Positions 34,501-61,300 of a stretch of 64,000 nt of DNA are shown piece by piece. A program made the translations under genes and the position numbers. The notes beneath the pieces are model-generated. The model was given only the letters and a program-made list of their open reading frames with translations, had not been told where the DNA came from and made no database searches. Source of the stretch: Diadema antillarum (lineage: Eukaryota); the NCBI RefSeq assembly GCF_040938485.1, contig NW_027271994.1, positions 62,001 to 126,000 on the forward strand, written 5' to 3'. How positions within the stretch are numbered: the stretch's first letter is position 1; each line of letters opens with the position of its first letter.

Positions 34501-37500
34501 AAATCAAATGAAATTATAATAGAAGTACAGACAAACGGGACTTACATCCAGCTCATAGAGGAAGTTGAATTCACTGGGCTGGTAGCACGCTCTCTCCACA
34601 GCCTTGGCCAGTTCCACTGCCCCAGCTCCGCCGAGGGCCCAGTGGTTGGACACCACGGCATCGTAGGCTCCACACTCCTTGGACAGATGCTGAAGAAGGG
34701 CCAACTCATTTGGCGTGTCTGAGCTGCGGTATACAGAGATATTAGATCACATAACATTTGAATTACCAAAGGCCAACTTCTAGTGTGCATTATGCACTTG
34801 AGTCTTGATCATCACGTGCACAAGTCTCAAATGTGGGTGAAAAAAAAAAAATCATGTTTATATTCATTCATTTCTTGACACATTTATATCACAATTTCAT
34901 GGTTCTTAATGAATAGATGTGTCCACGTAGATCAAGTTTTAATGAGTCGATTGTTTACACATGGATATTAAACATATATGGATAAAACAGCTTTAAAAAA
35001 CATGGGACTGAGAAAGATCTTCAACTGACTGGGGTACATTGTATGCTGCATTTCTCTCAAATAAAACAAGAAAGTAGACTGTCTACACAAACTATTCAAA
35101 AACACAATCAGACCAAATACTTCATAATCAGTTACCTATATCTGTTAGCTCTCAACTGACAGGAAAAGCTGACATCTCAAATTAAAGTAGAAAACGTGAA
35201 TTCCAGAGAATGGTGCACACAATCATTGTTTAAAGTGGTCCAGCTTCCATTTAAACTCAACTTATTGTACATTGTTGATGGCTTCCTTACTCCAGCAAAT
35301 TAAAGCATTATGAAACGAACAATCATTACTCATTAAAACCATTTAATACATTAAACCACATTTAAACATCTCCATCAAAGTTTTAAAAAGGTCAATTCTT
35401 ACGCAAACTGGTTGATGGCCACCACACACGGGACTCCAAAGTACTTTGTGTTTTCAATCTGTTTCCGGAGGTTGCAGAAACCTTTCTCCAGCAGCTCCAG
35501 GTTTTCTTGGCTGTACTCTGGAGCAAGCGGCCTTCCAGCAGTCACCTGCAGAAACCAAAAAATAAAAATATATATACATGGCGAATAATTTTTGTTACTT
35601 CTTAATTGGAGATTAAAGTGTGTGTGTGAGGAAGAGGGGGATGCATTAACATTGTCATAAACCTCATTTTATGTACTGAGTTTTAAGCATTTTTGTTTTC
35701 TTTTTCATACTTAAAACTGAAAGATTATTAGGTTGGGCAAATGCCTGCAGAATAACAAAAGCATTCATTTAAAAACTACATCTTTTTTATTATTAGCCAC
35801 TTTTCTGTTTGTAGGCATAGCCTACAATGTACTAGGCACTTTCCTCTCCACAGTAACTACACAAATATACAAAATGGGGAAAAAAAACAACAAACATAAC
35901 TTTACAAATGGCAAATACAGCTTGCATCATCTTGAAAAGTGAATTCCAATGGCACTGTTAATATAATCAGCAAGAGCATTGGCATCATCTTGACAAGTGA
36001 ATTCCAATGGCGCTGCTGATAGGACATTATTAGCAAGTGTATTCCATGACACTTAAAAATTCACATTGGGCAATTTTAGAATTTTAAAATTCAGAATTTC
36101 AAAAGCTTAGAAATTCAAATGGGAGGCAGCAATCAGGTGACAACAATGTGTCAACTCACGTTAGGTCCACCTCCGTGCATCTTCAGGGCTCTGACTGTGG
36201 CCACGATCACACACGCACTGGGTTTCAGGCCCGAGTAGCGGGTCTTGATGTCAAAGAACTTCTCCATGCCAATGTCAGATCCAAAGCCTGCCTCAGTAAC
36301 TGGAATTGAAAAAAGAATAAAACATGGGAGATTAAAAAGTGTGGTCACAGCATAGTCAACCTAACAGATGTTTACTTCCCACTTGTGAGATACACCTACA
36401 TAATCAGGAAGCCCAACTGTACTCAGGTTTAAGTGTTTGACTTCAACTCAAGTCAAGCATTTCATAGGTCAAAAAGCTTCTTTTACTTCGCCCAAGGAGG
36501 TATAAAGAGAATTGCATGGCTTATCATGAGGAAAAACAGGCTTTACCTCATAAATTAATACAATTAATTTTCTGATTGTTAGGCTATTTATGTTAGGGTG
36601 TGTGTGTGCCTGCGTGTGCATGTTAGCATAACATTGTATCAATTTGCTGAATACAAGATATTTTTGTAATTAACAAACAATATTTTAATAACATGACTCA
36701 TGATGACACATTAATGCAATTGTTCTTTTCAGAGACAGACATAAATATAAGGCTTTGCCTTCCTGCCTGTCACCTAACACTTTCCAATCAGTTTGTTTTT
36801 CGTGTATCTCATGAATGTTGTTGTAATTCTCATGCTTTCATATATGTCTTATTGTTTGTAATGCTGTCTGTTTTGGTTATTTGCTTTCATAGAAGTGTTA
36901 AATAAAACTCAACTCAACTCAACTCATCCAAGCATTGCAATCCAGCCACCAATTTTTACGACAACAAAATGTGAAAAAGCCTATGCACAATGGACCCTGC
37001 AAAGTGAACAACTGCTATAGCTCACTTGAGCATTTCAATTCAAGTGAGCTAAAAACTAGTTTAACCGCAATCACACCACTGATTGTGTTTGACTTCAATC
37101 TTTATTGAAGGAAGCAAAGACATCAATTTTTTTCAATGTTTCTTTAATTTTTTGGTTGCTGAACTTTGAACAAAGTGCATTCACAAATGATTTGCTAGTA
37201 TCTTCTATGCTTTAACAGCTTCAAAACTTTCAAGTGGCTGGGCGTAGTTGAAATTTTCTCGATAACTATTCTGTAAATCTTCAATCACACATCTTTTATC
37301 TTCAGTATTGACAACAAGTCTCAGTGGGTAAGAACTTGCAAAAGACTTTGAGGAATTGCCACTATCTAAAGGAATGATTCCTTTAAACCACGTAGCACCG
37401 CTAAATCTCATGAGACTTTCTTGTGTAGCGAGTACAAGGATGGCTCACCGACAAATCCATGCTCTCCCACCAACTTGAGCGCTATTTTGTCAGCCAAGAT

Positions 37501-40500
37501 GGACGAGTTTCCATGGGCGATGTTGGCAAACGGTCCAGCATGGACAAACACTGGGTTACCCTGAAAGAAATAGGAGAAAATTGATGAAACAACTCACATA
37601 TGATATACGACACAATGAAGACACAGTTTGACCAAAGTGGGAAGTAACTTAAATGCACAATTTTTATGTTTAGATCCCCATGCTTTCTGAAAATATCACT
37701 GCTGTCTAAGCTACTGTGACATCATTTCCTTTCATTCGTAAAGGTTTGAACAAAAATATGAGATTGATTCATCAACAGATAATAGGCTCATTTCAAATCA
37801 TTTTCATTTACCAAACAAGCTCAAAAAAAAAAAAAAAAATGACACTGGTAAATTAAAATGGTTTCACGTACAACTAAAGATTTTATATCAACTTATTTGG
37901 GAAATTTGCAAAGACTAATTCAATGACACTTTTTCTTTTGCTTTCCTTAAAAAATGGGTAATTAGAAAACACGCTTCTTCTTTTTTTTACAAAAAAATAC
38001 GATAATCACATTAATCATAATCACAGCATTCATAATCATCATCATCACCACCACCACCACCAGTCACAAGTTTCATCATTTTCCAAATTATCCCCATCAC
38101 CTTCAACATTTAAATGATCATCATTACACCCAGGCAACCCCATTATCATTGCAAACATCCCCCTTTCAGTCATTATTACCTCCAGAGTCTGCATGAGGTT
38201 TGGTTTGATGGCGTCCTTCATGAGCACGGTGAGGGCCCCGCCCAGACCGAGGTCATCTGCCGTCACGGGCTCGCCCTGCTTGTTGCTGGCGACGACGATC
38301 TTGCCCAGGCGCTGGCGCATGTCGGCCAGGTTGTTGGTCAGGGCGAGAATGGCCATGATCTCGCTGGCCACTGTGATGTCGAACTGGGTCTCGCGAGTGA
38401 AGCCCTTTTCGGTCGGGGACTGTCCGATTGTGATCTTGCGCAGGTAGCGGTCATTAGTGTCCATCACTGCAACATGGAAGCAGCATTATCAATAACAATG
38501 AATGATATTAAGTCATGTCAATTGTCCTTGCTCCTACAAAAACAATACAGGACACAGATATTGAAAAAATAAAAGGTTGGACCCACCTTTTATTAGGATC
38601 TCTTTGTTTCTGGATATCTCGGCCATTTCAAAACCGATTTCCGTCAAATAATCTTTGAACTCCTCTTAGAATTGTATGTACATAAAAGAAGTTTCTAATC
38701 ATCTCGTAAAAAGTTAAAACCTGAATTCCCATCCCAACTGAAACTATACTAACCTTCTAAATTCTCATGTAGAATACATCACCAGTAAACCACTGTAAAA
38801 CGAGGAATGTTCGCGTGCATTCTAATTTCGCGAATTTCGCGAGCGGCAACATTCGCGAAATTAAAATGCACACGAAAGTTCTTGCCTACACAATATGCAC
38901 TGGATGCCAGTGTCAAGTCGCGAAAATTTCATGCTACGATAAACGCTGTCGGCTCCAATTCGCAAAATTTTCATGCCGCGAATATATCGTGTTTTACAGT
39001 ATGTAATAACTTTAGAGATTTGACAGAGACCAATGGACTGACCTCGCTGCCATGTGATGGTTGAAATATCGATGTCCAAACGGGCAAACTTGTGAATCTC
39101 CTCCTCAGTCAAGTCATCAGGGTTTGTTTTGTCAATGCCAAGACGCTGGGAGAAGGGGGAATAAGATAGTTCAGAAAAACTCTAGTTATAAGACACAACT
39201 CTTTTCCAACTTCCTGTAAGACTTTGCAATTTTATGACAATGCAATTACTGCAGAAACCTGGTGTACAAACATATATGCTCTTTGTCTACAATAGAACTT
39301 GAATGCAATCAAGAGAATGAGCCGGAAAGTTGAACACTTGCTGCCTAGCTACAGGGGAAACACATTCATCATCTTTATCATACATTGGGATTTAACTTTG
39401 TCAATAGTGAAAGGTTGCCCTCCATAGTCATCTGGATCATCACTGACCCTCCTCTGCCTTTTGTCTGTTCACCCTCCTTTACCTGTTGGGCTCTTTGCCC
39501 ATGACCTCCAACCCTCCCCTTTTGTGTTTTCTTTGTTCTGTGTCCTAAGCCTTCCCCTGACTGTTCTTGTTGTGTGTAGTCCTTATATGTGATTGCTTTC
39601 CCTGCCTGTTTTGTCATTTTGCCTCTGACGAAGATTCTGCTAGGATTGAAAGCTCAGGCCCCTTTTGACTCCATTTTACTCCATCGGCTTGCCACTATTG
39701 GATAAGCAGTTTTCAGCAGCTTTTTTTTTGCTACACTTTGTCAATTATCTGTTAGGTTTCAGCCATTGATATTTCAAGTTACTGACATGAGTATTCACGA
39801 TAATCATCATACCTTCAGCCTGCCGAGCTGGATGTCGGAAAATGCACGCTGGCCCTTCTTGGTTGGCACAAGTCTGCCATAGAGGGCAGAGTCCGTCTGG
39901 GTGGATTCGTGGAAGATCCTGGCATCGATGGCCGCAGCCAGGAGGTTGTTGGCTGCTGTGATGGCATGGATGTCCCCAGTCAGATGAAGATTAAACTAAA
40001 CAAGAAACATGGGATTAAAAAAAAAATGAAACAAACACAATTTTCATATGTCATCACTGACAACCTTAATCTGAATACATCAGCCACATAAAAATACTAT
40101 GGTTTCAAAGCCTCTCTTGGCATTCTAAAACGAAGCAAAAAGGAAGCAAAATTAGGTATTTGCCACAAAGGACTCATTAGAAACCCATGTGAATACAATG
40201 AATTCAAACTCATGTTGAGATACAAGAGAACATGATAACATGGAAATAAGTAAGCATATACAAACAACCTCTGGTCATCATACCTCAATATGATATCCTT
40301 ACAAACCAGCAGTAGAAAGAACCTGTATCTGAACTGGTTACCAAGATTTCTGTTGAGCCCCAACAAAAGGCATGAAAAAGCCCTGGCATACCTCTTTAAA
40401 CTTTGGCCATGTTGGCAGTGACCTTGTAACTCTTGTGGTACAGTGATAAAAGCTGTGAAGGAATTTAATAATGCCTCTGACTTCTCAAAATTCTTGAGTT

Positions 40501-43500
40501 TTAAAGACAATAACATCAATAACTTTCCTTGTCAGAGTGAACAGTCTTAAATGTGTTCGTCAAACAGAATGAAAAGAATAAATCCCAAAATAAAAGAAAA
40601 AAAAACGTGATATCAAATGACTGTATTTTCAGTGCCACAAGATGCAGGTTGCTTTCCAAACACATATTTATTGACTTTTGTCACTGGTGTTCTTTCTGTG
40701 ATCTTGAGGGGATTAAGAATAGTACTTTGTGGTTTTAAAGCTCTTTTCTTGCATATCCACAGTATTAAATTCCTTTATATATTTTTAATTCATGTGAAAA
40801 GAACCCCATCTGCGATGGACACACATGGGATCAACAGATCAATAATTCCCCATATCCTTACCTCTTCCATGGGAATGACTTGTGCATATCCGCCCCCGGC
40901 TGCCCCGCCCTTGATACCGAACGTCGGCCCCTGAGAGGGTTGACGGACACAGGCAAACACATTCTTCCTGAGGTGGGATCCCAGGGCTTGCGTCAGGCCA
41001 ATTGTGGTGGTACTCTTGCCCTCTCCCAGCGGGGTTGGGGTAATCCTAAGAACAAACGTTAACACTGATTAAATATCATAGATCCAGATTAGCCACTACT
41101 ATCTAATTCTGCTGCTCCTTGCTCTTTAGAATTTAGACTGTAGATCCGCAAGCACATTGGCTATCAATGCTGCACAATTCGCCAGAAATGTTTCACAGAT
41201 TTAAAAAAAAGCCTTTTGTTACGTCAGAAGCTTTCTCTCCCAAATGACAAATCTTTGTAAATTACTTTATGATTTTGCAAATATAATGATTTATAATGGC
41301 TCCTTTTATTCTCGTCCAAGTACAGTATACTCAGTAAAATTCAGAGTTGCCAATTCAACGAAACAATTTCTGCAGCAAAACCACTCCAGAAATCCTATGA
41401 TCCAATAATTCAAGTCATTTCAATTCAGTTAAATTTTATTTCCAAATACCATTCATTCTATGGTGCACGGAACATTTCCATTCTCGATACAGTAATACAA
41501 AATTTAACAAAGTGTCAGTGGCATAGCTGTTTGAATTTGTGTGTGTGTGTGCGTGTGCATTCAGTGGCATAGCTGTTTGAATTTGTGTGTGTGTGTATGC
41601 GTGTGCATAATCCAGTCTACTCACCCCCCAACCACAATGTACTTTCCGGGAGCCCTGTCCTTCAGTCGGTCCAGGACCGTCAGAGATATCTTGGCCTTGG
41701 TCTTGCCGTAGAAGTCAATTTCGCTGGGCAGGAGCTGCAGTTCCTGGGCCAGCTCTGAGACTTCCTTGGGCTTCTGGGCTCTGGAGACCTCGATGTCTGA
41801 GGGCACGGGGTCCTTCGGTCTGAGTTGGAGGTAGCGCATTTTCCACTGGTCGCCCTACACCACAATGTGAAGAAATTGCCAATGTGATCAAATAAGTTAG
41901 GACAGTTATGGAACAGTTTCATTGATACAGAAAATATTATTGCATATCAATGAGTAGCAGGTCAAAGTGGAACATGATGTTGAGAGTGCCAGCAAATACA
42001 AAACTTTCACTGGCGCCAAGGCAATCTCTAGCCTCATGCATTATCGTAGATTCAATACGTGAAACTTAATAGCGATTCAAGCTCACACCATTGCAGTTTG
42101 TTGTTGAGAAAAGTTTGAAACACAGCAAAAAATATGTGAAGCAAATCATGCACACACCTATTTTGGAACTCCAAGGGACAACATAAAACATTTCGCCCAC
42201 TTGTTCAGACGGGCAGTCAGGCAAAGGGTGAGAAACAGGACAGCCTCCATTCATTTTATTTGCCCAGCCATAAGCGAGCACATGGGTTTTTGCAGCACCC
42301 CGATAACTCACCAGCGTCCCTTCCACAGTCCTCTTGGCACTCTCCACCGTGTTGCCCATCAGCATGGCCACCGTCATGGGCCCTACTCCTCCCGGAACGG
42401 GGGTGATGGCGCCCGCCACTTCCCTCACTGCGTTGTAGTCGACATCCCCCACCATCTTCCTGCCAGTCTTGGAGAATGGATCTATAGCGACACAGAGAGA
42501 GGTGCGGTTAAATGATGAGAGTCACAGGTAGCATCTCATGAAACCATTACAATGGGAGCAGTCTAACACTTTAGTTTGATGTGAACATTAACAAATAAAA
42601 GATGAGCATACCAATGATTGGAAAGTATATAATCTGTGGCTAAATAGTGATGAATATATTTGTATCTAATATATGACATGAAATATCTCATATCTGTTGT
42701 CTACACATGAACTGAGCTACACACAACACTATGAAAGGACAAGACACTGTAAAGACATGGCATTCCTACATGTTTTCTTTTATTCGAGAGTCAAGAATTT
42801 GCTTCCTTAGTTGACCTGAAATCATGAAAAGGAATGATTCTGTTATTACTTTCTAAACACAGACAGTGCTATAGCACTTCAGCACATGGAGCTTCACAGT
42901 TTTATCAATCATTTCCATTCATTGAGATGCAGAATCATTTTCTTCAAAGCCCCTTGCTAACACCTACTTTCTAATATAGAAGGCAGGTTTAGGATTTCAC
43001 CGCATGTTATGACTGCAGGGTATATAATGTAGTCTTGAAAAAGACTGTTTTATGAAGTCTTGAAAAAGACTGTTTTATGCAGTCTTGAAAAAGACTGTTT
43101 TATGCAGTCTTGAAAAAGACTGTTTTATGTAGTCTTGAAAAAGACTGTTTTATGTATTGTTTCCAAACAATACCACATGTAACTGCTCTGATGACAGAGT
43201 TCTAATAATTTTTCATTTCAATTCTTTGCATTGACAACTTCAGCAACAATGTAGGAAGAACAGCAAAACTGACTGATATTTCTCTTCCTTTAACATTTGT
43301 TAAATCTCTTATGAGTTTGCAGTTTTATAGTTACATTGAATTTTACCACGTAACTTACAAAACCAGTTCTTTACATAGGATATTTATAAGACAGAGACAC
43401 TGTTGACTAGAAGGAATGAAGGCCTAATTTCTACCCGGGCAGGTATGTTAACATGGCATGAGAAAATGGCAAGTAGGAGCAAGCTGATCTGGAAAATGAA

Positions 43501-49500: not shown

Positions 49501-52500
49501 AGCGCACAAGATTCATAAACTGAAATATTATAGAATTTCAGAACCTCACGAGGTGCATGGCTCTTCATTTGTGAGCATTGTGTGTGCGTGTGTGTTTGAG
49601 TTTATTTTAACAGGTAGATTTTGATACTGCCCCTAGACTTCCATTGAAGTATCAGCAACTTATGTATGTGCAGTGGTCCATGCAAAGAATTTGAGAGGAT
49701 AAATATTACTGATCTTCCAATTGATATAGCAGCATAAGAATCCTTCAAATAATTTGCACAGAAAAAAAAGAGGGCAAAGGTCGTGATGAAAGGTAAAACA
49801 GAGGCATGTAAAATACGAAGCTGAGAGGCAACAGTGTATACACTCAGGATTGTGTTTGCAATTCAATGACAACCGCTTTATCAATGGCTAGATAAAAAGA
49901 TTGAAGGATTTTAACGTGATAGCCTCAAGCTTTTGAGTTTGAATGCATACATGCAAATTATACAAGAACCCATAAGAACCAAATGAAATTCTAAAAATAT
50001 AATCAATTAACAAACTTTGAGAACTTTTGCACAAATATGGTATATTGATATGCTTTAAAAACGTCATGCAGAAAAAAAATAATAAAAAGATTAAAAATTC
50101 ATACTATAACACCCCATTCACACTGAGCAGAAGTCTTGTTTCTTAAACCGCTGAGGACGAGTCCCAAGTATACTCGGACAAGTGTCCATGGGAAATGCGT
50201 GGTGTAGCAAAATCAGCCAGTCCTAAACGGGTTAAAACCGCTTAATAATGCTTCATTAAGAGTCTTGTGTTCAGTGTAAAGAGATCAGATAGCCATATGT
50301 CGTTTTAGAATCTTTTCTGTACAGTTTAAGCAGAATTTAGAGCTGTCTGGCTTAGTGTAAATACCAAGTGGATTGAAATTTTTGTAAAAAACTTGGAAAC
50401 AAATATCTTCCATTATCCTTCATGGTGTACTATTAACACAAAACCAAATAGTGTGCATATACATCATGAAGGTAGGCTACATGTTTCACAACACAGACCC
50501 GTGCTGCAGTATAAATGGGGTATCAGATTCCCGGCACCGATTTTAATCGACAGCAAAGAAATTTTAAAAGGTAGGTCAGGTATCATAAGTGAAGAGTTTT
50601 TCAAGCAAAATCTGCATAGCATGTGATGCATCTGTATATAACAAAGGTCAAAAACTATTGTGGGACTTGTTTCAAATCAAATTCTTTCCTATCTTACTCT
50701 AAACAACTTCAAATGAAGTGGAGTGATGATAAAGTGTACAATAGACAGTATAGGACACAATACTAATTGTTTCATGATCACTGAAGTCATACGCAATCAG
50801 AATGATTGAGGCAATACAAAGATGGGCATGGTATTAATAAGCATTACTTAAAGTGAGAGAAGATATCCACAGCCCAATATATATCCTCAACAAATTTTTG
50901 AAACACCAGAAAGAGTATAAATGGCTGAGTGCAAACATTTAAATAAATGCGCTCAGTACACAATGTGTAAGTTGTCATTACTATACTGCATGTTTTTAAT
51001 GTAATCAAGGCACTTTATAGTTTGTTATTGTCCTACATGCCTTGTGAGTACATACCATACCATAAATTTTAAGTACCGGTATACTGTATCCGATAATTAG
51101 CCATAATCAAGGAATATTCTAACATAGCTCATGTACAAGCAGGACAACACTGCTTGAAATCAAAGAAGTTGTTTCCAATAGCCAACTGTTATACACTGTA
51201 TATACTGATGTACTTTCCCACACAGGAGGTTCTGATTACAGCTTTTGATACAGATTCAAGATATAATTCACTTTCTCAGGCAAAAAGCTGGACATTTTGT
51301 TTGTATACTTTGCTGATTATGTAATAAAACATCCTCTGATCAAAGACCGGCCATGGTTACTGATTAAATGGATATCACTCTGATTGATAAAATACTTTGT
51401 ATCATTCCTATAATCAGTCATTGAGAGTTCATTTCTCACATTGTTGTCTAATATTCATTACCACTTTTGAGCAAACTCTCTTCATGTGCTACAAGTCCAC
51501 TGAAAGTCTCATTGTTCATGTCTGTTTTCCCTGATTTTCAGACAACTTTGTCAAAACGTTCTGCCTACCAATGCCTCACATATCACAAAGGAAATTGCCG
51601 GCATGCGAAGTATATTATTCTCACACCATTGTGTTATCACTTGTAACACAAAACAACAAGATTTCATACACTGCAGGTACACTCTTGTGATTGTTACCTC
51701 TTTCTCCATTAATGCATTTTCCCTCAGTCTCTCTCTCCTATTTCAGTATTCTTTCACATTGAATTCTAAATAAATGAATAGGGTACATACCATCAATGAA
51801 GTTAATCCCGCAGTCGATCACCACTGCACCAGGCTTGATCCATTCCTTCTGTACGAAGCTAGGCTGTCGGATACCAACTACGATCACGTCAGACTCGCGG
51901 ATCTGAAGTAAAATCGACATTAGGCACTGGGGGATGAGTAGGCAGGTCATTTACTGATAGCATTAAATGATTAGTCTATGTTTTATTTTAATTTTGTGAG
52001 TGTGTGTGTAGATGCGTGTATGTTAAACAGCCACAAAGGAGATTAATAAGTAGCTTTCGGTACAAACTGCCATACAAAGTGGCAACCGAATTCTATCAAA
52101 GAACTGCTCGCTAAAAAGCAAAACAGAACATTTTTTTCTTCTCAGTAAAAAATAGCCATGAAGCAAGAATGACAGACAACAGAAGATTTGAAAAAGAAAA
52201 AAATAAAATCACATAACTTTACTTAATCATATATACCTAACAGTCAGGATGTACTCTACCATGGCTTTCTATGAAAATCATAATAACCCACTCTGTCTCA
52301 TTATTGCTCTTACATTCAGGTTATTCCATTAAGACAATTCTGACACATCTACAATACCTTCTACTAAAATTTATAATATATATTGTGGTTTTACTAATAT
52401 TTTTTTGAACTCTTCAAGAAACTGCTCTATGTATGTCAACCATCTGTACAACTGCTAATTTCAAGAATACGATTGGAAGAATTGCTTCTCTTTTCATGTA

Positions 52501-55500
52501 CTCTCTCTTGTGACAGTGTGTTGAATTGGTAACACCCATTCAGCATGCATTGAAATACATTTAAACTCTACCCTTATATCTACATATCAAAGCGCACATT
52601 AACTACAACCATGAATAGAATCTGTTTACTTTACAGATCTTTCAATTACTTTTTTATTTGCTCATATAAAGTGTTTGCCTTCCCTCTTGGTACATCACTG
52701 TTTACCACTGAAGCATGTAAATAGATTTCTTTGCACTTTGGCAAAGTGGGATATCTCTTGCTTATCATTTCTACACTATGTTCAACTATTGTATGTGAAC
52801 AGACCACTTGTGACTTCATATGAACCTCCTTTGTTTATGACACCTAAATAAGATTATAAACTGCACCAAACATTATGAACATATAATACACAAGTGATAG
52901 CATTACTACCATTGTTTGCAACATATAACTGAACATCCAGTCAAGCAATTCCCTTTTGACAAAAAAAGCTTGGTATTATTGAGTGGGCAAAACATCTTGA
53001 TGTAGCCAAATCATATTGCTAAAAAGCAAAAATTTGTCTAATTAGCAATTTACAATACAACCTCTTCTTGAACTTATTTTTTAAAATTTTTGGTATAAAA
53101 GACAGAACAGCAATATGTTGCCCACTCATCTTCCCATTGACTTGGTCTGCAACACTACACATGGCCAGATATTAGATTTGCCAAACTTAGGCAGATACTT
53201 ACTGATTAATGGCACAAAAAAGATTAATTGGTATTCAACCTAATCTTGACTCCAAATTTTAAGTAAGTCTTTTCCAAAGACTACACAGATAACTTACATC
53301 TAAGTGTATAGTTTGGGTTCTCGTATTGTTACATGGGGTAGGACTTTTTTGTACATTTAATGCTTTTATTTGATCCTCGACCTTTACCAGATTGTAGTGG
53401 GTATCAACAAGACATTAAAGGAGCCAATTATTGTCACCCATATCACATTCCAACAGTTTGTTCCTTACCAATGCAGCATTGCAATTGGTAATCACATTGT
53501 TAATACACTAAAGCAAGACAAACTCAAGCATGGTAGCAGGCTCAAACTTGTTTGGCAATCATGCAGTGTCATGAAAATAACCATCTTTGATGTTATTTGG
53601 GTTACAGTCACTCACGATGTCATCGATGTTTTTGGTGCGAGAATGGCACATGGTGACCGTGGCGTTGTGGGCCCTTAGGAGGTCCGACATCGGGGCACCG
53701 ACAATCTTGCTCCGTCCCAACACTGCCACCCGCTTCCCCTCCACGACCACACCTGTATCGATGAGAAAGGGTGGAAATGTTTGATACATTAAAGGCACAT
53801 TGTAACCAGACGACCCCTTTAAGACTGTGAGGATTTTCATCACATTTCTTATCAGCACTCCCTTACTCACGTTTCTTCCGATACTCAAGGCACTGGATGT
53901 CACGAGTTTCCTTTAAGTTTTAACACAGGACATTATTTGATGATTAAAATGCTATGGTTCAAAGTTCTTACAATATAGGTTCTAGTTTTCTGCCTCTCCA
54001 TATCTCGCTTTTTTTTTTTTTTATGACTGCGTTTAATACTGTTTATCATAAGATTCAAAACTCATACAAACCAGCAGACTGATGGCTCAAATGGATGCAG
54101 AAAGCAGTCAGCTAACAGACTATCAGTGAATCTTGAAGACTGGTAATTGAAGTCTGTATTTTATCACTGTCTGCTAGACTGGCAAAACAAAGAAAGGGTT
54201 AGACATGACAGATCCTAGTATGTAATACTGTACATGCCATATACTCTGCGAGTCTAAAATTTTTTCGAATCGGGTCCGAACAATTTCATTAGGGTAGATT
54301 CACGATTGTGGAGTACAGTAATTGATGGAAAAATGTTTGCGCACATGTCATGTTCAAGTTGAGATCAGAGTAACTATTTTTGTGTGCTTCTAAATTCGCA
54401 AATGGCACCAGCCTCGCAAAACTAGCAAAAAATGAAACGGTAGCTTCGAACTTACCCGATCTCTTCAAGAGCTCCATACATCCACGCGGAGTACATGGCA
54501 AGAAACACTGTCCCAGTTCACCGCGGGCCAACTTCCCTGCATTGTGGTCAGTCAGTCTGGCGAGAGTCATGCACAAAGTGGCACTTACAACGTACATTCA
54601 AACCAAAATTCCAACTGTGTTCACATCTGTTCAGTTCAGGTGATAACTGTTGGTGCATCACAGTAACTATACTTTCTTGCATGAGAGTCACAGATGCAAG
54701 ATCTCTAAATTTACCACTGTGACAAGTTATATTACTTACAGATTCAAAAGAAAGCCATTTTATTCAAATGTATTCATATATCATATGACGATAGCTACTG
54801 AAGCAATAAAGAGGGCACACAATATTCTACATTAATTCAAGATAATACTTTTCCGGGGTTTTTTTTTTGGCTGTGTGTGTGTCAACAATGTAAAATTAGC
54901 CACAGAAATGTTCCATGCATGCTTTCAGAGCTGCTGAGGTATGATATAGGAAGGAAAGACAGATATTAAAGGTAACCATGCTTCTGTTAAGCAGGAGTTA
55001 CAGATTACCATCCCTTCCCAAGCAAGCAATGGCAGCTCACCCATCAACATCCTTTTTGGGAGACACGGCATTGAGGAGGGCATCCTGGTCCATTGGCTCG
55101 TCCGACTCGGGAGGCATCTGGACCAAGATGCCGTGGATCCGAGGGTCCTTGTTCAGGTCACTGATCTTGTGGACCACCTGTATCAAAGGAAAATTCAAAG
55201 GTATGAGGGGACCTGCTTTTATTTCATGATGTGGAGCATTTTGGACATTATGGCACAAAGATCGCTTCAGCACTGCTCTCTAGTACAAAACACGCAGAAA
55301 CATGAAACAAATTCATCTGAATTTCTTACTTGTCACAACTATGTGGAATTGCTCTCAAAGGCAAAAAAGTAATAACATTTCAGCAGATGATGATTATGAA
55401 TGAAGTTCTTGGAAGTGAGTGTACAAAAAGTGTAACAATTTCAGGCCTAAAGCTTTATATAGAGAAGCATTTCATTGTAAGACTTGTATCACAGAGAAAT

Positions 55501-58500
55501 CATTTGCTATGCAGGAGTAGCTTACCTCAGCAAGAGAGCTGGAACTTGGAAGTTTGTAGTGCTCGGCAACCATTCCAATCTGTGCAAGAGCAAAAACAAA
55601 GCCAGTCAAACTTAGCTTCTTTAGTGTTTGTTCAGCAGAGAATGGCCAACAGTAATTGAATCTTTGAAGTATTAAAATCGACTCAAGTTGAAACAACAGA
55701 ACAATACTGTTTCCTTTGTTGTTTCTTTTCTTTTCTTTTTTAATTTTGCATGGGTATCCAGAAGATAATGCTCCTGGTCATAAGGATGTATAACATTTTG
55801 CCAATGCTATATTTTCCTGGATATGCGTTTCTAATCAGCATCCCGGCAAGTGCTTCAAATCCTACAATATATGCATACTGAGAGCAAAGTTTCACTTCTC
55901 TTGACCAGATATCAAAACTCCCCCAGACTGTGAAATTCATAATAGGAAATGGCTGCATTATGACAATCACTATGGAAACTCCCAAAGATTATGAAATTCA
56001 TAATCAGAATGATTTCAACGGGCATAAAAAAATTTAACCATCTTACCTCTGCTGCTGCTGCCAGCTTGAACTTGATGTAGCGATTTGAATCGCATCTGTC
56101 ACCAATCTACATCATGGAATTAGTGATACAGTTGGTAATAAAGCATATATACAGTATATACACAAAGTGAAAGATGCTTCCCTTGTACTGAATGTCTTTT
56201 TGGGAAGGAACATCACATGTGGTTGTCAAAGGCAGATATCAAGTACAGTTGAACCTCTCTTATCCGGCCTCCCTTTATCTGGATCTCTCTATTATACGGA
56301 CGCAATCTCGCCGTGATTTTTTTTTTAATAATTACTCCTTGAGATCTCCTACACAAACACAATGAATTACATTATACTTGATACATTTCTTAATAATTAT
56401 TTAGGTAAATCATCCCAAGAATTTATAAAAGAAAATTATTTCATTCTTGCAAACACGAACCTCTATTTTGGGGTCTGTTACTGAGTGTAACAATGAAAAG
56501 GTTGCAGTATACACATTACTACATGTGGTACTACAATGGGCTACATCAGTACATGTGTATGTATATGTACATGTATAAAGCATTGAGTCTCCCGTATCCG
56601 GCCAAATCCCTTATCCGGATGAGCCCCGGTCCCGACTTGTCTGGATACGAGAGGTTCTACTGTACCTGAAGACTAAAATCCTAAAAATGTCATGAGACTC
56701 AAGTTACAGCCAGGACGAAACATTTAACCAGATACTTAGTATTCAACAGATGTGGTAACTAGTCTGACATACATGTACACAACAAGCTCAATTCAATGTA
56801 TTTAGTGAGAAATGAATCAACAAGGGTACTGAAGAGAAGTACAACATGTATGATAAACAATGCTAGCTTTTTATTAATCATTCTGGTGTGGGGGCATTGT
56901 CATCTAGATTTGGACATTATGCTATTCCAACAGAAGAGGCCATCTGCACATCAAACATCCTCCTAAGAACTGAGCACTTAAAAAGGAAGGCTATTCCTGC
57001 CATCACTAGGTAATTTTTACATGCAGTATTTGAATTCACTTCTTTTGTTTGCTTATTAGTTGTTTTACCTGGACAATGGCAAGTCCTGGCATGAAACCTG
57101 GATGTCTCTCCTTCAGCATAGCAACCTCCTCCTGGAGCTCCTGGCGGATCTCCCTAGAGTGGAATGGAAAGAGAGCATGGAATGAGAATGGAAGGATAGT
57201 TTGCATCTCACAAACACACAAGACCATGTGACTATACGCATTGTAGTCATAAGCATTCACACACACTCACTTACAAACACACAAATCCTACATAAAAAAA
57301 ACCCTTCAATGAATGCAAATGCAGGTGACAATGTTTCTGTTCAGGCACAAAATCAAAAAGACCTCTTGAAGAAAAAAAAAATGAAGCTCACATGAAGAGT
57401 TGATTACGATATAATGGAGAGATAGCAAGTGGCAGAAAGGTGTGAAGGAGAGGGGAGAAGGAGGGTAGAGAAGAGAAAGAGAAGGGAAAGAGAAGGGGAA
57501 GCAGAGGCAAGGGGGAGGTGGAAGGCGAGGGGGAGGGGAATGGGAGAGGATTTATGAGAGGGATGGAAAGACAAATCCAGTTGGGGATAAAGTTCTACAA
57601 GGATTTCCAAACAGATGTCAAATCATGCATACTTAGACATTCTGTCCTTATTACATTACGTATGTAAAGCAAAAAAAAAATGATTTTGAATTCTTATCAA
57701 TAAAAGATGGGACATTTAATTACTCATTGGTGACTTTACATATTGACTAGTCATTAAACTTCAACACACATTTCATAACAAGACATCACTTTTTCAACAA
57801 AGTGCTCGCACTCTCACAAGACCAACATTTCTCTCTCCCCTTACATGTCAGAGCAAAACATGGACACTGCATTGGCACCACACTTTCATGATTTCATGCA
57901 CTACTGGTAGTAATTTCACTTGCCATGATGGCACCGTTCACTATGTACTCTGCATAAAACCCACACTGGGATAATCATGTGACACCAAGGCACAGACACC
58001 TTGTGTAAGCACAACTAGTGCATCGTATTTCCTTTGTTTACTTGTCAACAGAAGAAGACCAAACATGTAGGCGTTATCTCAGTTCCCTAAGCTCAGCCCT
58101 GGGAATGAGGACCTTGATGTGATATCACAAAGGCAAATTATGCACAGAATTCAAACACCTTAGTTCTCCTGGCACCACCCTCGAGGCTTTTGATGTTTCA
58201 TTTGTGCAGAAAGTGACACCTTGTAAATAAATGGCATGTTTGCAAAACAATTACAGGTAGACATATCACACTTATTTTTTACTGTGTGCATGTGTGCAGG
58301 ACTGCCTGTCTGTTCTGTGTATTTTTTTAAAACACACACACACACACATATACACTTTCTGTTCTTCCTATTTCTGTGTATTCATTTCATTGATTCTTTA
58401 TGTTCAAAGGGAGTGGTTAAATACAAACTCCCCTCACGATTGAGAGCAAACACTAGAAGGCTACTGGCCACTGTTATGTAATGTTGCGCAGCACATGTCT

Positions 58501-60749
58501 TTACTTTTCTCCTATGTTCATTACAGCAAATGATTTAAATGAAATGAAATGAAATGATATCAGTAATCATCATTATCAAACATTTCTTCATAACAAAATA
58601 TGATTCTAAAATCATATTTTGCTAATTATATCCCTCACCCTTCAAAGTAGGATAGATTTACAGCACATTTCCCGGATGACCAACAAATTAGTTTTCCGGT
58701 GCATTTTCTGGATTTTTTTTACCTTACCCCCCCCCCCCCCCAATCTGAAAAATGTTCTGCTGCCCATGCATATATTTCAAGTCAGGTGATCACTAATTAA
58801 CCTATTGCAGAGGGCATGTCCACCGTCCTTGGCGACATTATTCTTTGAAATAATGAAAAGGGCAGGGTAGATCTACAGTACATTTCCCGGACGACCAACA
58901 AACCTGTTTTACGGTGCATTTTCTGGATTTTCTTTACCTTACCCCCCCCCCCCCCCCCTCAATCTGAAAAATTTTCTGCTGTCCCTGTATCATATTTCAA
59001 GTCAGGTGATCACTAATTACCCTATTGCAGAGGGCATGTCCACTGTTCTTGGTGACACTGTTCTTTGACATGATGAAAAAAAAAATGGATCCACAAAATC
59101 TTATACCCCCGATCCATCTGTAATATGGAGTTACCATCCAGGGGCAGGGTACATAGGCCCTACAGTGTAACAGTGTACCAATATACAGCAGAGACTCCAA
59201 CCCAAAGCACCTTCTGATCTGGAGATTCTCCCACCTGAAACCCCTAGCAAACGGGAGACTCGAAGTTGATGTGTGCGAAGCGCGAAATTCCTAGGGTTGT
59301 AGATGCTCTCTGGTGCTATCTAAGGCTTATTTTTCAACATACAATAGCAATAAGTAAGAAATCCTTTCCAACGGGAGACACAGAGCCAGGGAGGGAGAAA
59401 TTAAATCTCAAACGGGAGAACGGGAGATTTTGCAAAAATGGGTTTTCGGCGGGAGATCTCCCGTCGAAAACGGGAGAGTTGGAGTCTCTGATACAGGCAA
59501 CCACCACATGCACACACACACACACACACACGTACCTACACGCCTCGCCTGCATATAGGGTTGTTTGCGGCAGTAGCGGATGAATGAAGGAAGCAGAAAA
59601 ATATTAATATGAGAAAGATGTGATGACGAGCTTCATATGCCATCGTATATTTACAAAGTAATTTTCACACTGTGCGATTTTTTTGTGATAACGTCACATC
59701 ACACAGCGATGGATTGCCAGATGACGTATGTCATGGGACCCACTTTTTGTTACTTTGTTTTTGGATGTGTCAGCCATTCCAAAGCCAATTTTCATCTCAT
59801 AATTAATTTGAATTAATTGAATTCCTATTAGATTAGAATGGTATGGTCTTACATAACGTATATGTATATACATGGTTTTTGCGATATCTCATAAAAAGTT
59901 AAAGGTAACCCAATTCTCATCTCCACCATCTAATACCATACCATCCCTCTCAACAGTCACGTCAGGTCACTAAGGGCTAAGGCTAAAAAAGCTAAGCAGC
60001 TCAGCCTGCCCCTGCCCCTGCTGCACTTGACCGAAAGATTGGTCTGTATCTGGTCGTCGGGGATATGTTCTGCGGAGACTGCATCTGGCTTCACTGATCC
60101 CCTACGGAGGAGAGTGATAACGTCAATAAAAATAAAAGACTCCTCCGGACAGACGGATTTTTCTGTCTAACTTGTGTTACTGCACTGCTGCTGCACCTGC
60201 CCTGGGTGGTGCATGGTCCATGGTCTGGATATATGCATGCTGGGGTACGTAGTTTCGGGCCCTTGCTCTCTCTCCTCTCTCTCTCCCTCTCTCTCTCGTG
60301 TTATATTTGATCTGTCAGAGAGAACCAGGCCGCGGTAAGACGGGACTGGTATCCCTCAGCAAACATGGGTGTACATTCAAGCCAGGCACACCATGTCCAT
60401 GCTCCACCTCCTCGCATTTTGTAACAACAGTTTGGTTATGACTGAGTCGAACCGCCAAAATTAACGAGGCGAGGGTGCGTCACTTGCAACGTACATTTTC
60501 ATTTCTAGGCAAGGTAATCTATCGAAAAGCAAATTTAGTAACTTACTTGGCTATTCCTTTCCCGTCGATAATACTAGCCATATCTAGACACGGTCGAAGG
60601 TATGGGTACGGCAAAACTTTCAGCCTCTGACTGGCACTCAAGGCAGATTTGGATACCTCTCTCGAGGTGGTATTGGACACCCAGCGCTTCACGTGTTCAA
60701 AGTGCAAGTTTGTCGATGGCCTCACGATAAGGCTCCGTATCCGAAACAT
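31553..60749 (-). CDS. MTHFD1: Trifunctional C1-tetrahydrofolate synthase (methylene-THF dehydrogenase/cyclohydrolase + formyl-THF synthetase), 989 aa from ATG 60749 or 933 aa from ATG 60581; 20 exons complement(60547..60749, 57069..57153, 56047..56106, 55526..55579, 55041..55177, 54456..54556, 53616..53752, 51791..51902, 42312..42481, 41625..41854, 40862..41045, 39813..39995, 39043..39145, 38180..38466, 37449..37560, 36160..36299, 35403..35545, 34546..34723, 33438..33698, 31553..31642)
   Basis: The exons total 2970 nt in one frame, all GT-AG. D/C domain: IIDGK, YIKFK (YxxxK), [56 protein letters not shown]. Synthetase domain: [88 protein letters not shown] and C-terminal [17 protein letters not shown]…GLF*. 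Confidence 0.96.
32440..32668 (+). mobile_element. LINE/SINE 3' end with (AATC)n tail; 5' boundary approximate
   Basis: Stem-loop GGGGCCTAA…TTAGGTCCCC around ACAAGCTATGCTT, then AATAAA and a microsatellite tail. Confidence 0.5.
33225..33398. mobile_element. Tc1/mariner (Tigger-like) MITE
   Basis: TA-CAGGTAACTCCCGTTACAACG … CGTTATAAGAGGAGCGCACTG-TA. Confidence 0.6.
36730..36926 (+). mobile_element. LINE/SINE 3' end with (AACTC)n tail; 5' boundary approximate
   Basis: GACAGAC…AGGCTTTGCCTT…CTGTC stem-loop, then AATAAA directly followed by a pentanucleotide tail. Confidence 0.5.
38792..39000. mobile_element. TTCGCGAA-rich MITE family C
   Basis: ACTGTAAAACGA … TCGTGTTTTACAGT termini with multiple TTCGCGAA palindromes. 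Confidence 0.7.
39360..39720 (+). mobile_element. Probable Penelope-like element terminal (pLTR) fragment in MTHFD1 intron 12; boundaries approximate
   Basis: Pyrimidine-rich tract surrounding the minimal hammerhead. Minimal palindromic-stem-III hammerheads are an established hallmark of Penelope-like elements. No recognisable ORF remains. Confidence 0.45.
39621..39659 (+). ncRNA. Minimal type I hammerhead ribozyme motif (Penelope-like-element type), slightly decayed
   Basis: GCCU-CUGACGA-A-GAUUCU-GCU-AGGAUU-GAAA-GC-UC^AGGC. Stem I is GCCU/AGGC, the core CUGANGA and GAAA boxes are intact, stem II has 6 bp including two G-U pairs, and stem III is reduced to palindromic AGCU with a CUC cleavage triplet. 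Confidence 0.7.
41516..41608. repeat. Tandem duplication, 46-bp unit x2 next to the MTHFD1 exon 10 donor
   Basis: CAGTGGCATAGCTGTTTGAATTTG(TG)n starts at 41516 and 41562. Confidence 0.85.
43031..43155. repeat. Minisatellite, 5 x 25 bp (AGTCTTGAAAAAGACTGTTTTATGN)
   Basis: Units start at 43031, 43056, 43081, 43106 and 43131 and differ only at the last base. Confidence 0.95.
48622..48863. mobile_element. TTCGCGAA-rich MITE family C
   Basis: TA-CTGTATA … TATACAG-TA with repeated TTCGCGA motifs. Confidence 0.7.
50143..50235. mobile_element. 93-bp piggyBac-type MITE, copy 2 (opposite orientation)
   Basis: Same length, TTAA ends, and an interior that is the reverse complement of 10048-10140 with some substitutions. 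Confidence 0.75.
54228..54445. mobile_element. Decayed family C MITE next to the MTHFD1 exon 6 donor
   Basis: Its left end CTGTACATGCCATATAC…GCGAGTCTA matches the reverse complement of the right end of 48622-48863. Confidence 0.5.
56246..56662. mobile_element. Tc1/mariner (Tigger-like) MITE
   Basis: TA-CAGTTGAACCTCTC … GAGAGGTTCTACTG-TA with TATCCGG subterminal repeats. Confidence 0.75.
58652..59078. repeat. Tandem duplication, ~215-bp unit x2 with poly-C tracts (MTHFD1 intron 1)
   Basis: …ACATTTCCCGGA.GACCAACAAA…CGGTGCATTTTCTGGATTTT…TTTCAAGTCAGGTGATCACTAATTA… occurs twice. Confidence 0.9.
59189..59490. mobile_element. hAT-like MITE with AACGGGAGA subterminal repeats
   Basis: Perfect 13-bp TIR CAGAGACTCCAAC / GTTGGAGTCTCTG; ATACAG flanks both sides. 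Confidence 0.75.
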
Positions 60750-61300
60750 TCTCCACTAGGCCGCCGGCGGGCGCTGCTCCACTCGCTCGTATGGTACCGC
60801 ACCAGTACGCAAAGCAATACTAGAATTCTCAATTAAAATTTGCAATTTCCCGTCTGATCGTCATCGAAAATAGGAATCCACATAGGCAATTACATAAATC
60901 AATTGGAAAACAGCATATCTTCAGAACATATTACACGGATCGTTTAAAAGATTCGCGGAAAGCACATCTTCGGAACCATTCGCCGGTATATTTTTGCCGG
61001 TATTCGCGAATGTACACAACTCCCGATGGTAATGTTTTCAATTCATTTGGCGCCACATGTGAGGAACAAAAAGAACGCGCGCCTTTCTCCGTACGAAAGC
61101 TCTCCCAGTTTCCGCTTGATTGAGATGCGGTTAGTGACGTCACGGTTGGCAGCTAAACCCACGATTGAGGTCGGCTTGCTTCGCATGCTTTCGACCAAAA
61201 CAGAAAATGAATGAACGTGGGCGAATATCACGTGAACACACCCAGAGAGCACATGGGATGCGGGTCTGTCTGTGTTGTGTCGCCGTGTCCTGAAAAGGTC
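60750..61300. promoter_or_regulatory. CpG-rich promoter of MTHFD1 with CRE and E-box motifs; possibly bidirectional
   Basis: CpG-dense region directly upstream of ATG 60749, with a perfect CRE palindrome TGACGTCA (61135-61142) and TCACGTGA (61228-61235). Confidence 0.6.

What the first reader, a model, noticed from the sequence alone, without database searches (positions are those of the whole stretch)
60547..60758. One catalytically intact MTHFD1 gene appears to encode both a mitochondrial and a cytosolic trifunctional C1-THF synthase from two in-frame ATGs
Seen: ATG1 (60749; A at -3; in-frame TAG three codons upstream) adds 56 aa, [56 protein letters not shown] (10 R/K, 11 S/T, 3 D/E). ATG2 (60581; G at -3 and +4) begins MASIIDGK, where cytosolic MTHFD1 starts. 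No ATG occurs in any frame between them. The D/C domain keeps YxxxK (YIKFK), KDVDG, GRSKIVG and CHS (NADP-type), unlike vertebrate mitochondrial MTHFD1L, which has lost D/C activity. Established: yeast uses two trifunctional genes (ADE3, MIS1), and vertebrates use MTHFD1 plus mitochondrial MTHFD1L and MTHFD2/2L. Inference: leaky scanning or alternative TSSs give dual targeting, possibly the state before the MTHFD1/MTHFD1L split.
Basis: partly seen in the sequence, partly recalled or inferred. Interest (0 to 1): 0.76.

Follow-up and report, generated by a model that had tools for sequence, protein, structure and literature searches.

The report
Sea-urchin MTHFD1 with conserved N-terminal leader
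A sea-urchin gene for the folate enzyme MTHFD1 starts with a conserved, translated 56-residue leader that looks like a mitochondrial address tag, followed by a second start codon at the usual cytosolic start, so one gene may serve both compartments; this is plausible and useful but not proven, and the mechanism is a well-known one.

Summary
On the minus strand, ATG1 (60749) and ATG2 (60581) are in frame in exon 1 of an intact 20-exon MTHFD1 gene. It encodes 989 aa (long form) or 933 aa (short form), with all splice sites GT-AG and the catalytic residues kept.

New evidence shows the 56-aa extension is coding. Two deeply diverged relatives (a Tara metagenome contig and a Logan contig) keep ATG1, the frame and ATG2. 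Synonymous sites are saturated and the flanks are unalignable. Yet the last 37 codons show pN 0.14-0.16, against about 0.5 for the first 19 codons. That is the pattern of a labile presequence followed by a constrained segment. A spliced RNA contig from a closer relative covers ATG1 and at least 131 nt upstream.

Mitochondrial targeting is plausible from composition and conserved R-3/R-10 motifs, but no predictor or import test was run. The leaky-scanning argument is weak. The lack of intervening ATGs is not significant (P 0.07-0.25), and both relatives have intervening ATGs. I could not test for a second paralogue, nor the "pre-MTHFD1L ancestral state".

Verdict: a real feature and a new member of the known two-AUG dual-targeting kind. 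The scan noted a similar two-ATG arrangement in a pyrophosphatase gene of this genome, but nothing for MTHFD1 on other DNA.

The parts
60756..60758 (-). In-frame TAG stop three codons upstream of ATG1; it closes the frame, so ATG1 is the first possible in-frame start
60747..60749 (-). ATG1, start of the 989-aa long form (context AGAATGT)
   Evidence: conserved as the first in-frame ATG in L001 and L004
60684..60746 (-). Codons 2-22 of the extension: fast-evolving, basic, Ser/Thr-rich; the putative mitochondrial presequence
   Evidence: pN about 0.5 and pN/pS 0.54-0.74 between lineages; indels only in multiples of 3; composition
60582..60683 (-). Codons 23-56 of the extension: strongly conserved segment (RWVS...[17 protein letters not shown]), function unknown. 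It contains the conserved R-3/R-10-type motifs
   Evidence: pN 0.14-0.16 against saturated pS 0.68-0.86 over the last 37 aligned codons; invariant columns; motifs
60579..60581 (-). ATG2, start of the 933-aa short form at the canonical MTHFD1 N-terminus (context GATATGG)
   Evidence: numbering against 1A4I
60547..60749 (-). Coding part of exon 1 (203 nt, phase-2 end); GT donor at 60546-60545
   Evidence: junction 60547>57153 seen in the spliced RNA contig of run X13
60750..60880 (-). 5' leader that is transcribed in a close relative; contains no ATG up to 60863; CpG observed/expected 1.4
   Evidence: the X13 contig aligns across 60546-60880 and runs 118 nt further
57069..57153 (-). Exon 2
51791..56106 (-). 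Exons 3-8: the remaining dehydrogenase/cyclohydrolase exons upstream of the 9.3-kb intron. Coordinates: 56106-56047, 55579-55526, 55177-55041, 54556-54456, 53752-53616, 51902-51791
31553..42481 (-). Exons 9-20: end of the D/C domain, the linker and the FTHFS (formate-THF ligase) domain, with the stop codon at 31555-31553. Coordinates: 42481-42312, 41854-41625, 41045-40862, 39995-39813, 39145-39043, 38466-38180, 37560-37449, 36299-36160, 35545-35403, 34723-34546, 33698-33438, 31642-31553

Best explanation
Exon 1 of an echinoid MTHFD1 (trifunctional C1-tetrahydrofolate synthase) gene carries two conserved in-frame start codons. Initiation at ATG1 gives a 989-aa protein. Its first 20-25 residues act as a mitochondrial presequence; they are followed by a conserved segment of about 34 residues that probably stays on the mature protein or holds the processing sites. 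This long form would supply the mitochondrial matrix with C1-THF synthase, above all the 10-formyl-THF synthetase step that releases formate, a job done in vertebrates by the separate gene MTHFD1L. Initiation at ATG2 gives the ordinary 933-aa cytosolic enzyme; ATG2 could be reached by leaky scanning, by reinitiation, or from a transcription start downstream of ATG1. Because both products share one D/C domain that the cytosol needs, that domain stays catalytically intact, unlike in MTHFD1L. Shown here: the gene model, the intact catalytic motifs, translation-level selection on the extension, and ATG1 inside a relative's mRNA. Inferred: mitochondrial import, use of ATG2, and the absence of another gene for either compartment.
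For: The gene is intact: 20 GT-AG exons, 989 aa, Pfam THF_DHG_CYH, THF_DHG_CYH_C and FTHFS. The catalytic and NADP-type residues align to human MTHFD1. The extension is kept in frame, with ATG1 and ATG2, in two unrelated contigs: L001-L003 from Tara metagenomes and L004 from a Logan assembly. Between all three lineages pS is 0.68-0.86 (saturated), and the flanking 200 nt upstream and 150 nt of intron are at random-level identity (0.51-0.58 against 0.52 for shuffles). Yet pN is 0.14-0.16 in the last 37 codons and about 0.5 in the first 19, and the length differences are multiples of 3. A spliced contig from run X13 shows both coding junctions with GT..AG ends and has no intron or upstream coverage, so it comes from RNA. 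It spans 60546-60880, and its only two gaps (60807, 60818) are upstream of ATG1. The leader has net charge +7 and 11 Ser/Thr. The first acidic residue is at position 14-34 depending on lineage, and RWV|S, RE[VL]|S and R-10-type motifs are conserved. ATG2 has a purine at -3 and G at +4 in all three lineages, whereas ATG1 lacks G at +4. PMC11064299 states that MTHFD1L is vertebrate-specific and that non-vertebrate metazoans have MTHFD1 and MTHFD2 only, which leaves the mitochondrial synthetase step without a gene. PMC12718117 shows that two-start dual localisation is a pervasive alternative to paralogue duplication.
Against: No targeting predictor or import experiment was run. The maximal hydrophobic moment of the leader does not exceed shuffles. 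Two lineages have acidic residues within the first 22 positions. ATG1 has a purine at -3 in all three lineages, so most scanning ribosomes should stop there. Both relatives carry two out-of-frame ATGs between the starts, which would further reduce leaky scanning, although those short ORFs end before ATG2. No RNA run of the window's own species was listed, so its transcription starts are unknown. I could not retrieve annotated full-length urchin or other invertebrate MTHFD1 proteins, so a second paralogue is not excluded. In Drosophila all pug (MTHFD1) isoforms are predicted to be cytosolic (bioRxiv 10.1101/2022.11.25.517956), so the arrangement is not general among invertebrates.
Confidence: 0.45

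Rival explanations
1. One product only. Translation starts essentially always at ATG1. The long protein either goes entirely to mitochondria, with cytosolic MTHFD1 activity coming from another gene not in this window, or is shared between the compartments because a weak presequence is imported inefficiently. ATG2 is then simply an internal methionine inherited from the ancestral start.
For: ATG1 has a purine at -3 in all three lineages, and relatives have intervening out-of-frame ATGs that disfavour leaky scanning. The amphipathicity signal is modest and there are acidic residues early in the leader, which would fit a weak signal. M57 lies inside a fully conserved block, so its conservation does not by itself show that it is used as a start.
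Against: The literature describes MTHFD1 as usually single-copy in metazoans (PMC11064299). ATG2 keeps a strong context in all three lineages, and the short form begins within 2 residues of the human N-terminus. Nothing tested here separates the two models directly.
Confidence: 0.25
2. The extension is translated but is not a mitochondrial signal. It is an echinoid-specific N-terminal appendage with another role: regulation, protein interaction, or another destination such as the nucleus.
For: The best conserved part is the C-terminal 34-37 residues next to the enzyme (pN 0.14-0.16), which is more conserved than presequences usually are. There is no match in Pfam, the PDB or the ESM Atlas. The hydrophobic moment is not above shuffles.
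Against: The first ~20 residues evolve fast while keeping a basic, hydroxylated, acid-poor composition and the initiator Met, as presequences do. There is a metabolic need for a mitochondrial synthetase in animals without MTHFD1L (PMC11064299).
Confidence: 0.22
3. The extension is not translated. ATG1 opens a chance upstream ORF that happens to be in frame, and only ATG2 is a real start.
For: The short form alone would be a complete, canonical MTHFD1.
Against: The frame, ATG1 and the amino-acid sequence are preserved across lineages whose synonymous sites are saturated and whose flanks are unalignable. Substitutions in the last 37 codons are concentrated at synonymous positions, and all indels are multiples of 3.
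Confidence: 0.03

Closest known systems
Vertebrate MTHFD1 (cytosolic) plus MTHFD1L (mitochondrial, monofunctional synthetase)
   Same: The same D/C plus FTHFS architecture. The long urchin form would fill the role of MTHFD1L, namely 10-formyl-THF synthetase activity in mitochondria. MTHFD1L also carries an N-terminal presequence ahead of a D/C-like domain.
   Different: Here there is one gene rather than two, and the D/C domain keeps all the catalytic and NADP-type residues. In MTHFD1L that domain is degenerate (PMC11064299). No sequence similarity between the urchin leader and anything in the PDB was found.
Saccharomyces ADE3 (cytosolic) and MIS1 (mitochondrial), both trifunctional
   Same: A mitochondrial C1-THF synthase that is fully trifunctional and NADP-type, which is what the long urchin form is predicted to be.
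   Different: Yeast uses two paralogous genes from an independent duplication (PMC11064299). The urchin would use two starts in one gene.
Two-AUG dual-targeted genes: TRNT1/CCA1 (PMC12718117), yeast PIF1 (bioRxiv 10.1101/2024.01.21.576553), and, from my own knowledge and not checked here, mammalian FPGS, whose exon 1 holds two in-frame ATGs flanking a mitochondrial leader
   Same: Two in-frame starts in the first coding exon bracket a basic leader. The downstream start has the better +4 context. In other lineages the same need is met by paralogue duplication.
   Different: None of the functional evidence that defines those cases (localisation of each isoform, start-codon mutants, mapped 5' ends) exists here.
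Drosophila one-carbon genes Shmt and Nmdmc (MTHFD2 homologue), which give cytosolic and mitochondrial isoforms from one gene
   Same: The same pathway and the same single-gene, two-compartment solution in an invertebrate (bioRxiv 10.1101/2022.11.25.517956).
   Different: In the fly the MTHFD1 homologue pug is reported to have only predicted-cytosolic isoforms (same preprint). A mitochondrial MTHFD1 isoform would therefore be a difference between echinoids and flies.

Membership tests
MTHFD1 (trifunctional C1-tetrahydrofolate synthase) | D/C catalytic domain, NAD(P)-binding domain and FTHFS domain in one polypeptide | tested here: met
   Pfam PF00763, PF02882 and PF01268 on the exon peptides; one open 989-aa frame across 20 GT-AG exons
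MTHFD1 (trifunctional C1-tetrahydrofolate synthase) | Dehydrogenase/cyclohydrolase residues S49, Y52-xxx-K56, Q100, P102 and D125 (human DC301 numbering, as listed in PMC6443876) | tested here: met
   [12 protein letters not shown] and KDVDG at short-form positions 47-54, 97-100 and 120-124, two lower than the human numbering; alignment to 1A4I/6ECQ
MTHFD1 (trifunctional C1-tetrahydrofolate synthase) | NADP-type cofactor site (R173 in GRSKIVG, S197 in CHS) | tested here: met
   [10 protein letters not shown] and CHSRT align to human residues 163-204; the best PDB matches are human MTHFD1, ahead of FolD and MTHFD2. The role of these residues is from my own knowledge of the DC301 literature
MTHFD1 (trifunctional C1-tetrahydrofolate synthase) | The three enzyme activities | not testable with these tools
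   Needs recombinant protein assays
MTHFD1L (mitochondrial monofunctional synthetase) | Degenerate D/C-like domain lacking the catalytic and cofactor residues | tested here: not met
   All residues examined are intact, so the gene is not filed as MTHFD1L
MTHFD1L (mitochondrial monofunctional synthetase) | Membership of the vertebrate MTHFD1L clade in a phylogeny | not tested
   No full-length homologues could be retrieved. The literature places the duplication within Vertebrata (PMC11064299)
Mitochondrial matrix presequence | N-terminal 15-50 residues that are net positive, rich in Arg/Ser/Thr/Ala/Leu and poor in Asp/Glu | tested here: met
   Net +5, +4 and +3 over the first 30 residues; 5-7 Ser/Thr; 0-2 acidic residues in the three lineages
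Mitochondrial matrix presequence | Amphipathic helix | tested here: inconclusive
   Maximal hydrophobic moment 0.56-0.68 (11-residue window); 14-64% of composition-matched shuffles reach this value
Mitochondrial matrix presequence | MPP-type cleavage motif (R-2, R-3 or R-10) | tested here: met
   RWV|S, RE[VL]|S and R-x-V-x-x-[ST]-x-x-x-x are conserved in all three lineages. These short motifs have low specificity
Mitochondrial matrix presequence | Import into mitochondria and removal of the leader | not testable with these tools
   Needs GFP fusions, import assays or proteomics. TargetP and MitoFates were not available
Two-AUG dual-targeted gene | Two in-frame AUGs in one transcript bracketing the targeting signal | tested here: met
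   conserved in L001 and L004. The mRNA contig of a relative spans both starts
Two-AUG dual-targeted gene | A way to reach the second AUG: weak first context, no intervening AUG, or a transcription start between the two | tested here: inconclusive
   ATG1 lacks G at +4 but has a purine at -3. Absence of intervening ATGs is not significant and not conserved. Transcription starts of the window's species are unknown
Two-AUG dual-targeted gene | Both protein isoforms exist and localise differently | not testable with these tools
   Needs ribosome profiling, N-terminomics and imaging

The most novel reading that the evidence does not exclude
In echinoids, and perhaps in the deuterostome ancestor, a single catalytically complete MTHFD1 gene supplies both the cytosol and the mitochondrial matrix through two start codons. 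This would close the unexplained gap of how animals without MTHFD1L release formate from mitochondria. Vertebrate MTHFD1 and MTHFD1L would then be the subfunctionalised halves of such a dual-targeted gene: MTHFD1 lost the leader, and MTHFD1L lost D/C activity once freed from cytosolic duty.
Probability: 0.3. Interest if true: 0.65.

Novelty: new member of a known kind. Interest (0 to 1): 0.45.

Why it matters
Textbook one-carbon metabolism needs a mitochondrial 10-formyl-THF synthetase to export formate. The gene that does this in vertebrates, MTHFD1L, is reported absent outside vertebrates (PMC11064299), and I found no paper in the held library that says how invertebrates cover the step.

A conserved, selected mitochondrial-type leader on the only known MTHFD1-type gene gives a concrete answer that can be tested by embryo injection. 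It also gives a worked example of dual targeting later being replaced by paralogue duplication.

The impact is limited for three reasons. The mechanism is a familiar one. The localisation is unproven. The long isoform may already be present in existing urchin genome annotations, which I could not inspect.

Tried and rejected
1. Retrieving full-length urchin or other invertebrate MTHFD1 proteins, to see their N-termini and annotation. The word search accepts only candidates 0.55-1.75 times the query length, and no exon exceeds about 95 aa.
- Exon 1 as query found only the 98-aa ORF P0001.
- The exhaustive representative search with exon 1 found P0001, P0002 and a spurious tandem-repeat protein, P0003.
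- I aligned the urchin FTHFS exons onto a 631-aa Chloroflexi Fhs scaffold to reach the right length. That search returned 120 Chloroflexi ligases and no animal protein.
- A nonsense antisense-ORF scaffold was tested locally and gave a useless 112-column profile, so it was not submitted.
- P0002 with region 43-113 found nothing new.

2. Wider relatives in JGI metagenomes. A degenerate DNA pattern for [14 protein letters not shown] and a profile-guided scan both found nothing.

3. RNA evidence for the window's own species. No RNA run was listed. Only a relative's contig could be used, and contigs cannot show transcript ends.

4. The ESM Atlas, Pfam and PDB gave nothing for the leader.

5. The earlier-findings index has no note on MTHFD2, MTHFD1L or any other folate gene in this genome and no look-alike windows. 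This says nothing about their absence.

6. I rejected 'no ATG between the starts' as evidence for leaky scanning.

7. I rejected a PTS2 reading of RLKVLPYPY by eye: proline occupies a position where the consensus does not allow it. This rests on my own knowledge.
Full report
**What is in the sequence**

The region 60547-60758 on the minus strand is the first coding exon of an MTHFD1 gene.
- ATG1 is at 60749, in context AGAATGT. An in-frame TAG lies three codons upstream, at 60758-60756.
- ATG2 is at 60581, in context GATATGG, and is in frame with ATG1, 56 codons downstream.
- No ATG occurs in any frame between the two starts.

I rebuilt the whole gene from in-frame conserved cores and GT-AG sites.
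- It has 20 coding exons from 60749 to 31553, a 2970-nt coding sequence, and encodes 989 aa (long form) or 933 aa (short form). Every intron is GT-AG.
- The first two junctions (60547>57153 and 57069>56106) are confirmed by a spliced contig in a public run.
- Exon peptides hit Pfam THF_DHG_CYH, THF_DHG_CYH_C and FTHFS above the gathering scores.
- In the PDB the D/C exons match human MTHFD1 (1A4I, 6ECQ, 1DIA) better than FolD or MTHFD2. The equivalents of S49, Y52, K56, Q100, P102, D125, R173 and S197 are all present.
- Counting through the model, the short form is two residues shorter than human MTHFD1 at the N-terminus. ATG2 is therefore the canonical start.

**Which organism**

Earlier notes of this scan call the genome a sea urchin (s1-224550, s1-215123). 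I did not test this independently. It fits the fact that the only relatives of exon 1 come from marine samples.

**Is the extension translated?**

This is the main new result. A word search and an exhaustive representative search with exon 1 found two ORFs:
- P0001, on three short Tara Oceans metagenome contigs (L001-L003).
- P0002, on a Logan contig (L004). The database's gene caller read this one with TGA as Trp. In the standard code it has a TGA five codons upstream of its ATG1 and the same GT donor after GIAK.

Both contigs are genomic DNA, since the intron follows the exon. In both, ATG1 is the first in-frame ATG, the frame is open to ATG2, and the extension is 59 codons against 56 in the window, so the length differences are multiples of three.

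The three lineages are very distant from one another.
- The proportion of synonymous differences is 0.68-0.86, which is saturated.
- The 200 nt upstream and 150 nt of intron are at random-level identity (0.51-0.58, against 0.52 for shuffles).
- The last 37 aligned codons of the extension have pN 0.14-0.16 (pN/pS 0.16-0.22). The block [17 protein letters not shown] is invariant.
- The first 19 codons have pN about 0.5 (pN/pS 0.54-0.74).

Selection has therefore acted on the encoded protein, so an untranslated leader or chance uORF is effectively excluded. The gradient, a labile basic N-terminus followed by a constrained segment, is what a cleavable presequence followed by retained sequence would give.

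**Is ATG1 in the mRNA?**

No RNA run of the window's own species was listed. I laid four runs on 56000-61900.
- Run X13 (organism D, about 88% identical here) has an 1814-nt contig. It aligns to exon 3, exon 2 and then 60546-60880, with GT..AG ends at both junctions.
- X13 has no coverage of unique intron sequence or of anything upstream of 60925, so it is RNA.
- The contig's only two gaps are single bases at 60807 and 60818, both upstream of ATG1. The extension therefore has the same length and frame in that species.
- The contig continues 118 nt beyond 60880.

At least one transcript class in a close relative thus contains ATG1 and more than 130 nt of leader. Contigs cannot show where transcripts start, so a second start site between the ATGs is neither shown nor excluded. 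The region 60750-61300 has CpG observed/expected of 1.05-1.8, as expected for a promoter.

**Is it a mitochondrial signal?**

Composition fits.
- Net charge over the first 30 residues is +5, +4 and +3 in the three lineages, with few acidic residues.
- The leader has many Ser/Thr, and Arg outnumbers Lys.
- The motifs RWV|S, RE[VL]|S and an R-10-type pattern are conserved in all three.

Two points weaken the case. The hydrophobic moment is not above composition-matched shuffles, and two lineages have a Glu within the first 22 residues. No dedicated predictor was available, and Pfam, the PDB and the ESM Atlas say nothing about the leader. I rate mitochondrial targeting as the most likely function, at about 0.6, but it is an inference.

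The metabolic argument helps. [quoted passage not shown] That leaves the mitochondrial formyl-THF synthetase step without a gene in invertebrates.

**Is ATG2 also used, and how?**

This is the weakest part of the reading.
- For: ATG2 has a purine at -3 and G at +4 in all three lineages, while ATG1 lacks G at +4.
- Against: ATG1 has a purine at -3 everywhere.
- Against: the absence of intervening ATGs in the window happens by chance in 7% of shuffles and 25% of synonymous resamplings.
- Against: each relative has two out-of-frame ATGs between the starts, although their short ORFs stop 38-112 nt before ATG2 and so leave room for reinitiation.
- Neutral: the methionine at ATG2 sits in an invariant block, so its conservation is not diagnostic.

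Three routes remain open: leaky scanning, reinitiation, or a downstream transcription start. A fourth possibility is a single long product that is only partly imported.

**Comparison with what is known**

The arrangement works like the classic two-AUG dual-targeted genes.
- PMC12718117 shows that alternative start codon selection is a pervasive way to make mitochondrial and cytosolic or nuclear isoforms. It also shows that other lineages solve the same problem by paralogue duplication (TRNT1).
- Yeast PIF1 is a leaky-scanning example (bioRxiv 10.1101/2024.01.21.576553).
- From my own knowledge, mammalian FPGS in the same pathway has two in-frame ATGs flanking a mitochondrial leader in exon 1.
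- Within one-carbon metabolism, Drosophila Shmt and Nmdmc make both isoforms from one gene, but all pug (MTHFD1) isoforms are predicted to be cytosolic (bioRxiv 10.1101/2022.11.25.517956).

I found no paper in the held library describing a mitochondrial MTHFD1 isoform in any invertebrate. That library is incomplete, and I could not inspect urchin genome annotations.

The gene meets the tested defining features of MTHFD1 and fails the defining feature of MTHFD1L, a degenerate D/C domain.

**What could not be done**
- All attempts to fetch full-length animal MTHFD1 proteins failed because of the length window of the word search.
- The JGI metagenome scans were empty.
- As a result, three questions are untested: the breadth of the leader beyond these lineages, the existence of a second paralogue, and the proposal that this is the state before the MTHFD1/MTHFD1L split.

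**Verdict**

This is a real, selected, transcribed N-terminal extension on an intact MTHFD1. It is probably a mitochondrial leader, and one gene may serve both compartments. It is a new member of a known kind: moderately interesting, directly testable, and possibly already present in annotations.

Noticed in passing
L005:1811-3703 (and L006-L059); window 31553-41854: 631-aa formate-THF ligases of Chloroflexi MAGs (Ardenticatenaceae, Anaerolineae) are 68% identical to the urchin synthetase domain over 633 aa, and 75-80% identical over one exon. That is much closer than Firmicutes Fhs, at 57-63% over the same exon. It points to a eukaryote-like long Fhs clade in Chloroflexi, or an old transfer.
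   Followed up: partly
window 56197-56787, 59152-59545, 59743-60333: These stretches of introns 1 and 2 have summed contig depths of 10^4-10^5 in DNA runs of related species and many truncated contigs. They are high-copy repeats or transposon fragments.
   Followed up: no
window 60600: In DNA runs of a related organism (X5, X7), about half of the depth carries an in-frame 3-nt deletion inside the extension. A second, more diverged contig class covers 60515-60667. These are probably two haplotypes, and the indel preserves the frame.
   Followed up: no
L004:522-1001 (P0002): The database protein P0002 was called with TGA read as Trp. It therefore runs through a real upstream stop and into the intron, which is why the locus 'does not translate to the query'. 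Short ORFs called on eukaryotic Logan contigs can be artefactually long.
   Followed up: yes
P0003 (740 aa): This tandem-repeat ORF (units of about 60 aa containing VKILPYECLQP) scored E=3e-7 against the conserved [12 protein letters not shown] block through seven repeats. I judged it a spurious repeat-driven hit.
   Followed up: partly
window 60864: The first ATG upstream of ATG1 lies 115 nt away, is out of frame and opens an 11-codon ORF. It sits inside the stretch transcribed in the relative, so the leader may carry a small uORF.
   Followed up: no
window 39621-39659: Another first-stage note (s1-208800) places a minimal hammerhead ribozyme antisense in the intron between exons 12 and 13 of this gene. 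I did not examine it.
   Followed up: no
window 42482-51790: The intron between exons 8 and 9 is 9.3 kb, by far the longest in the gene, and splits the D/C NAD(P)-binding domain. I did not examine its content.
   Followed up: no
window 15337-15477 and 18671-18808: Two runs of N (assembly gaps or masked stretches) lie downstream of the gene, outside the finding. I left them untouched.
   Followed up: no
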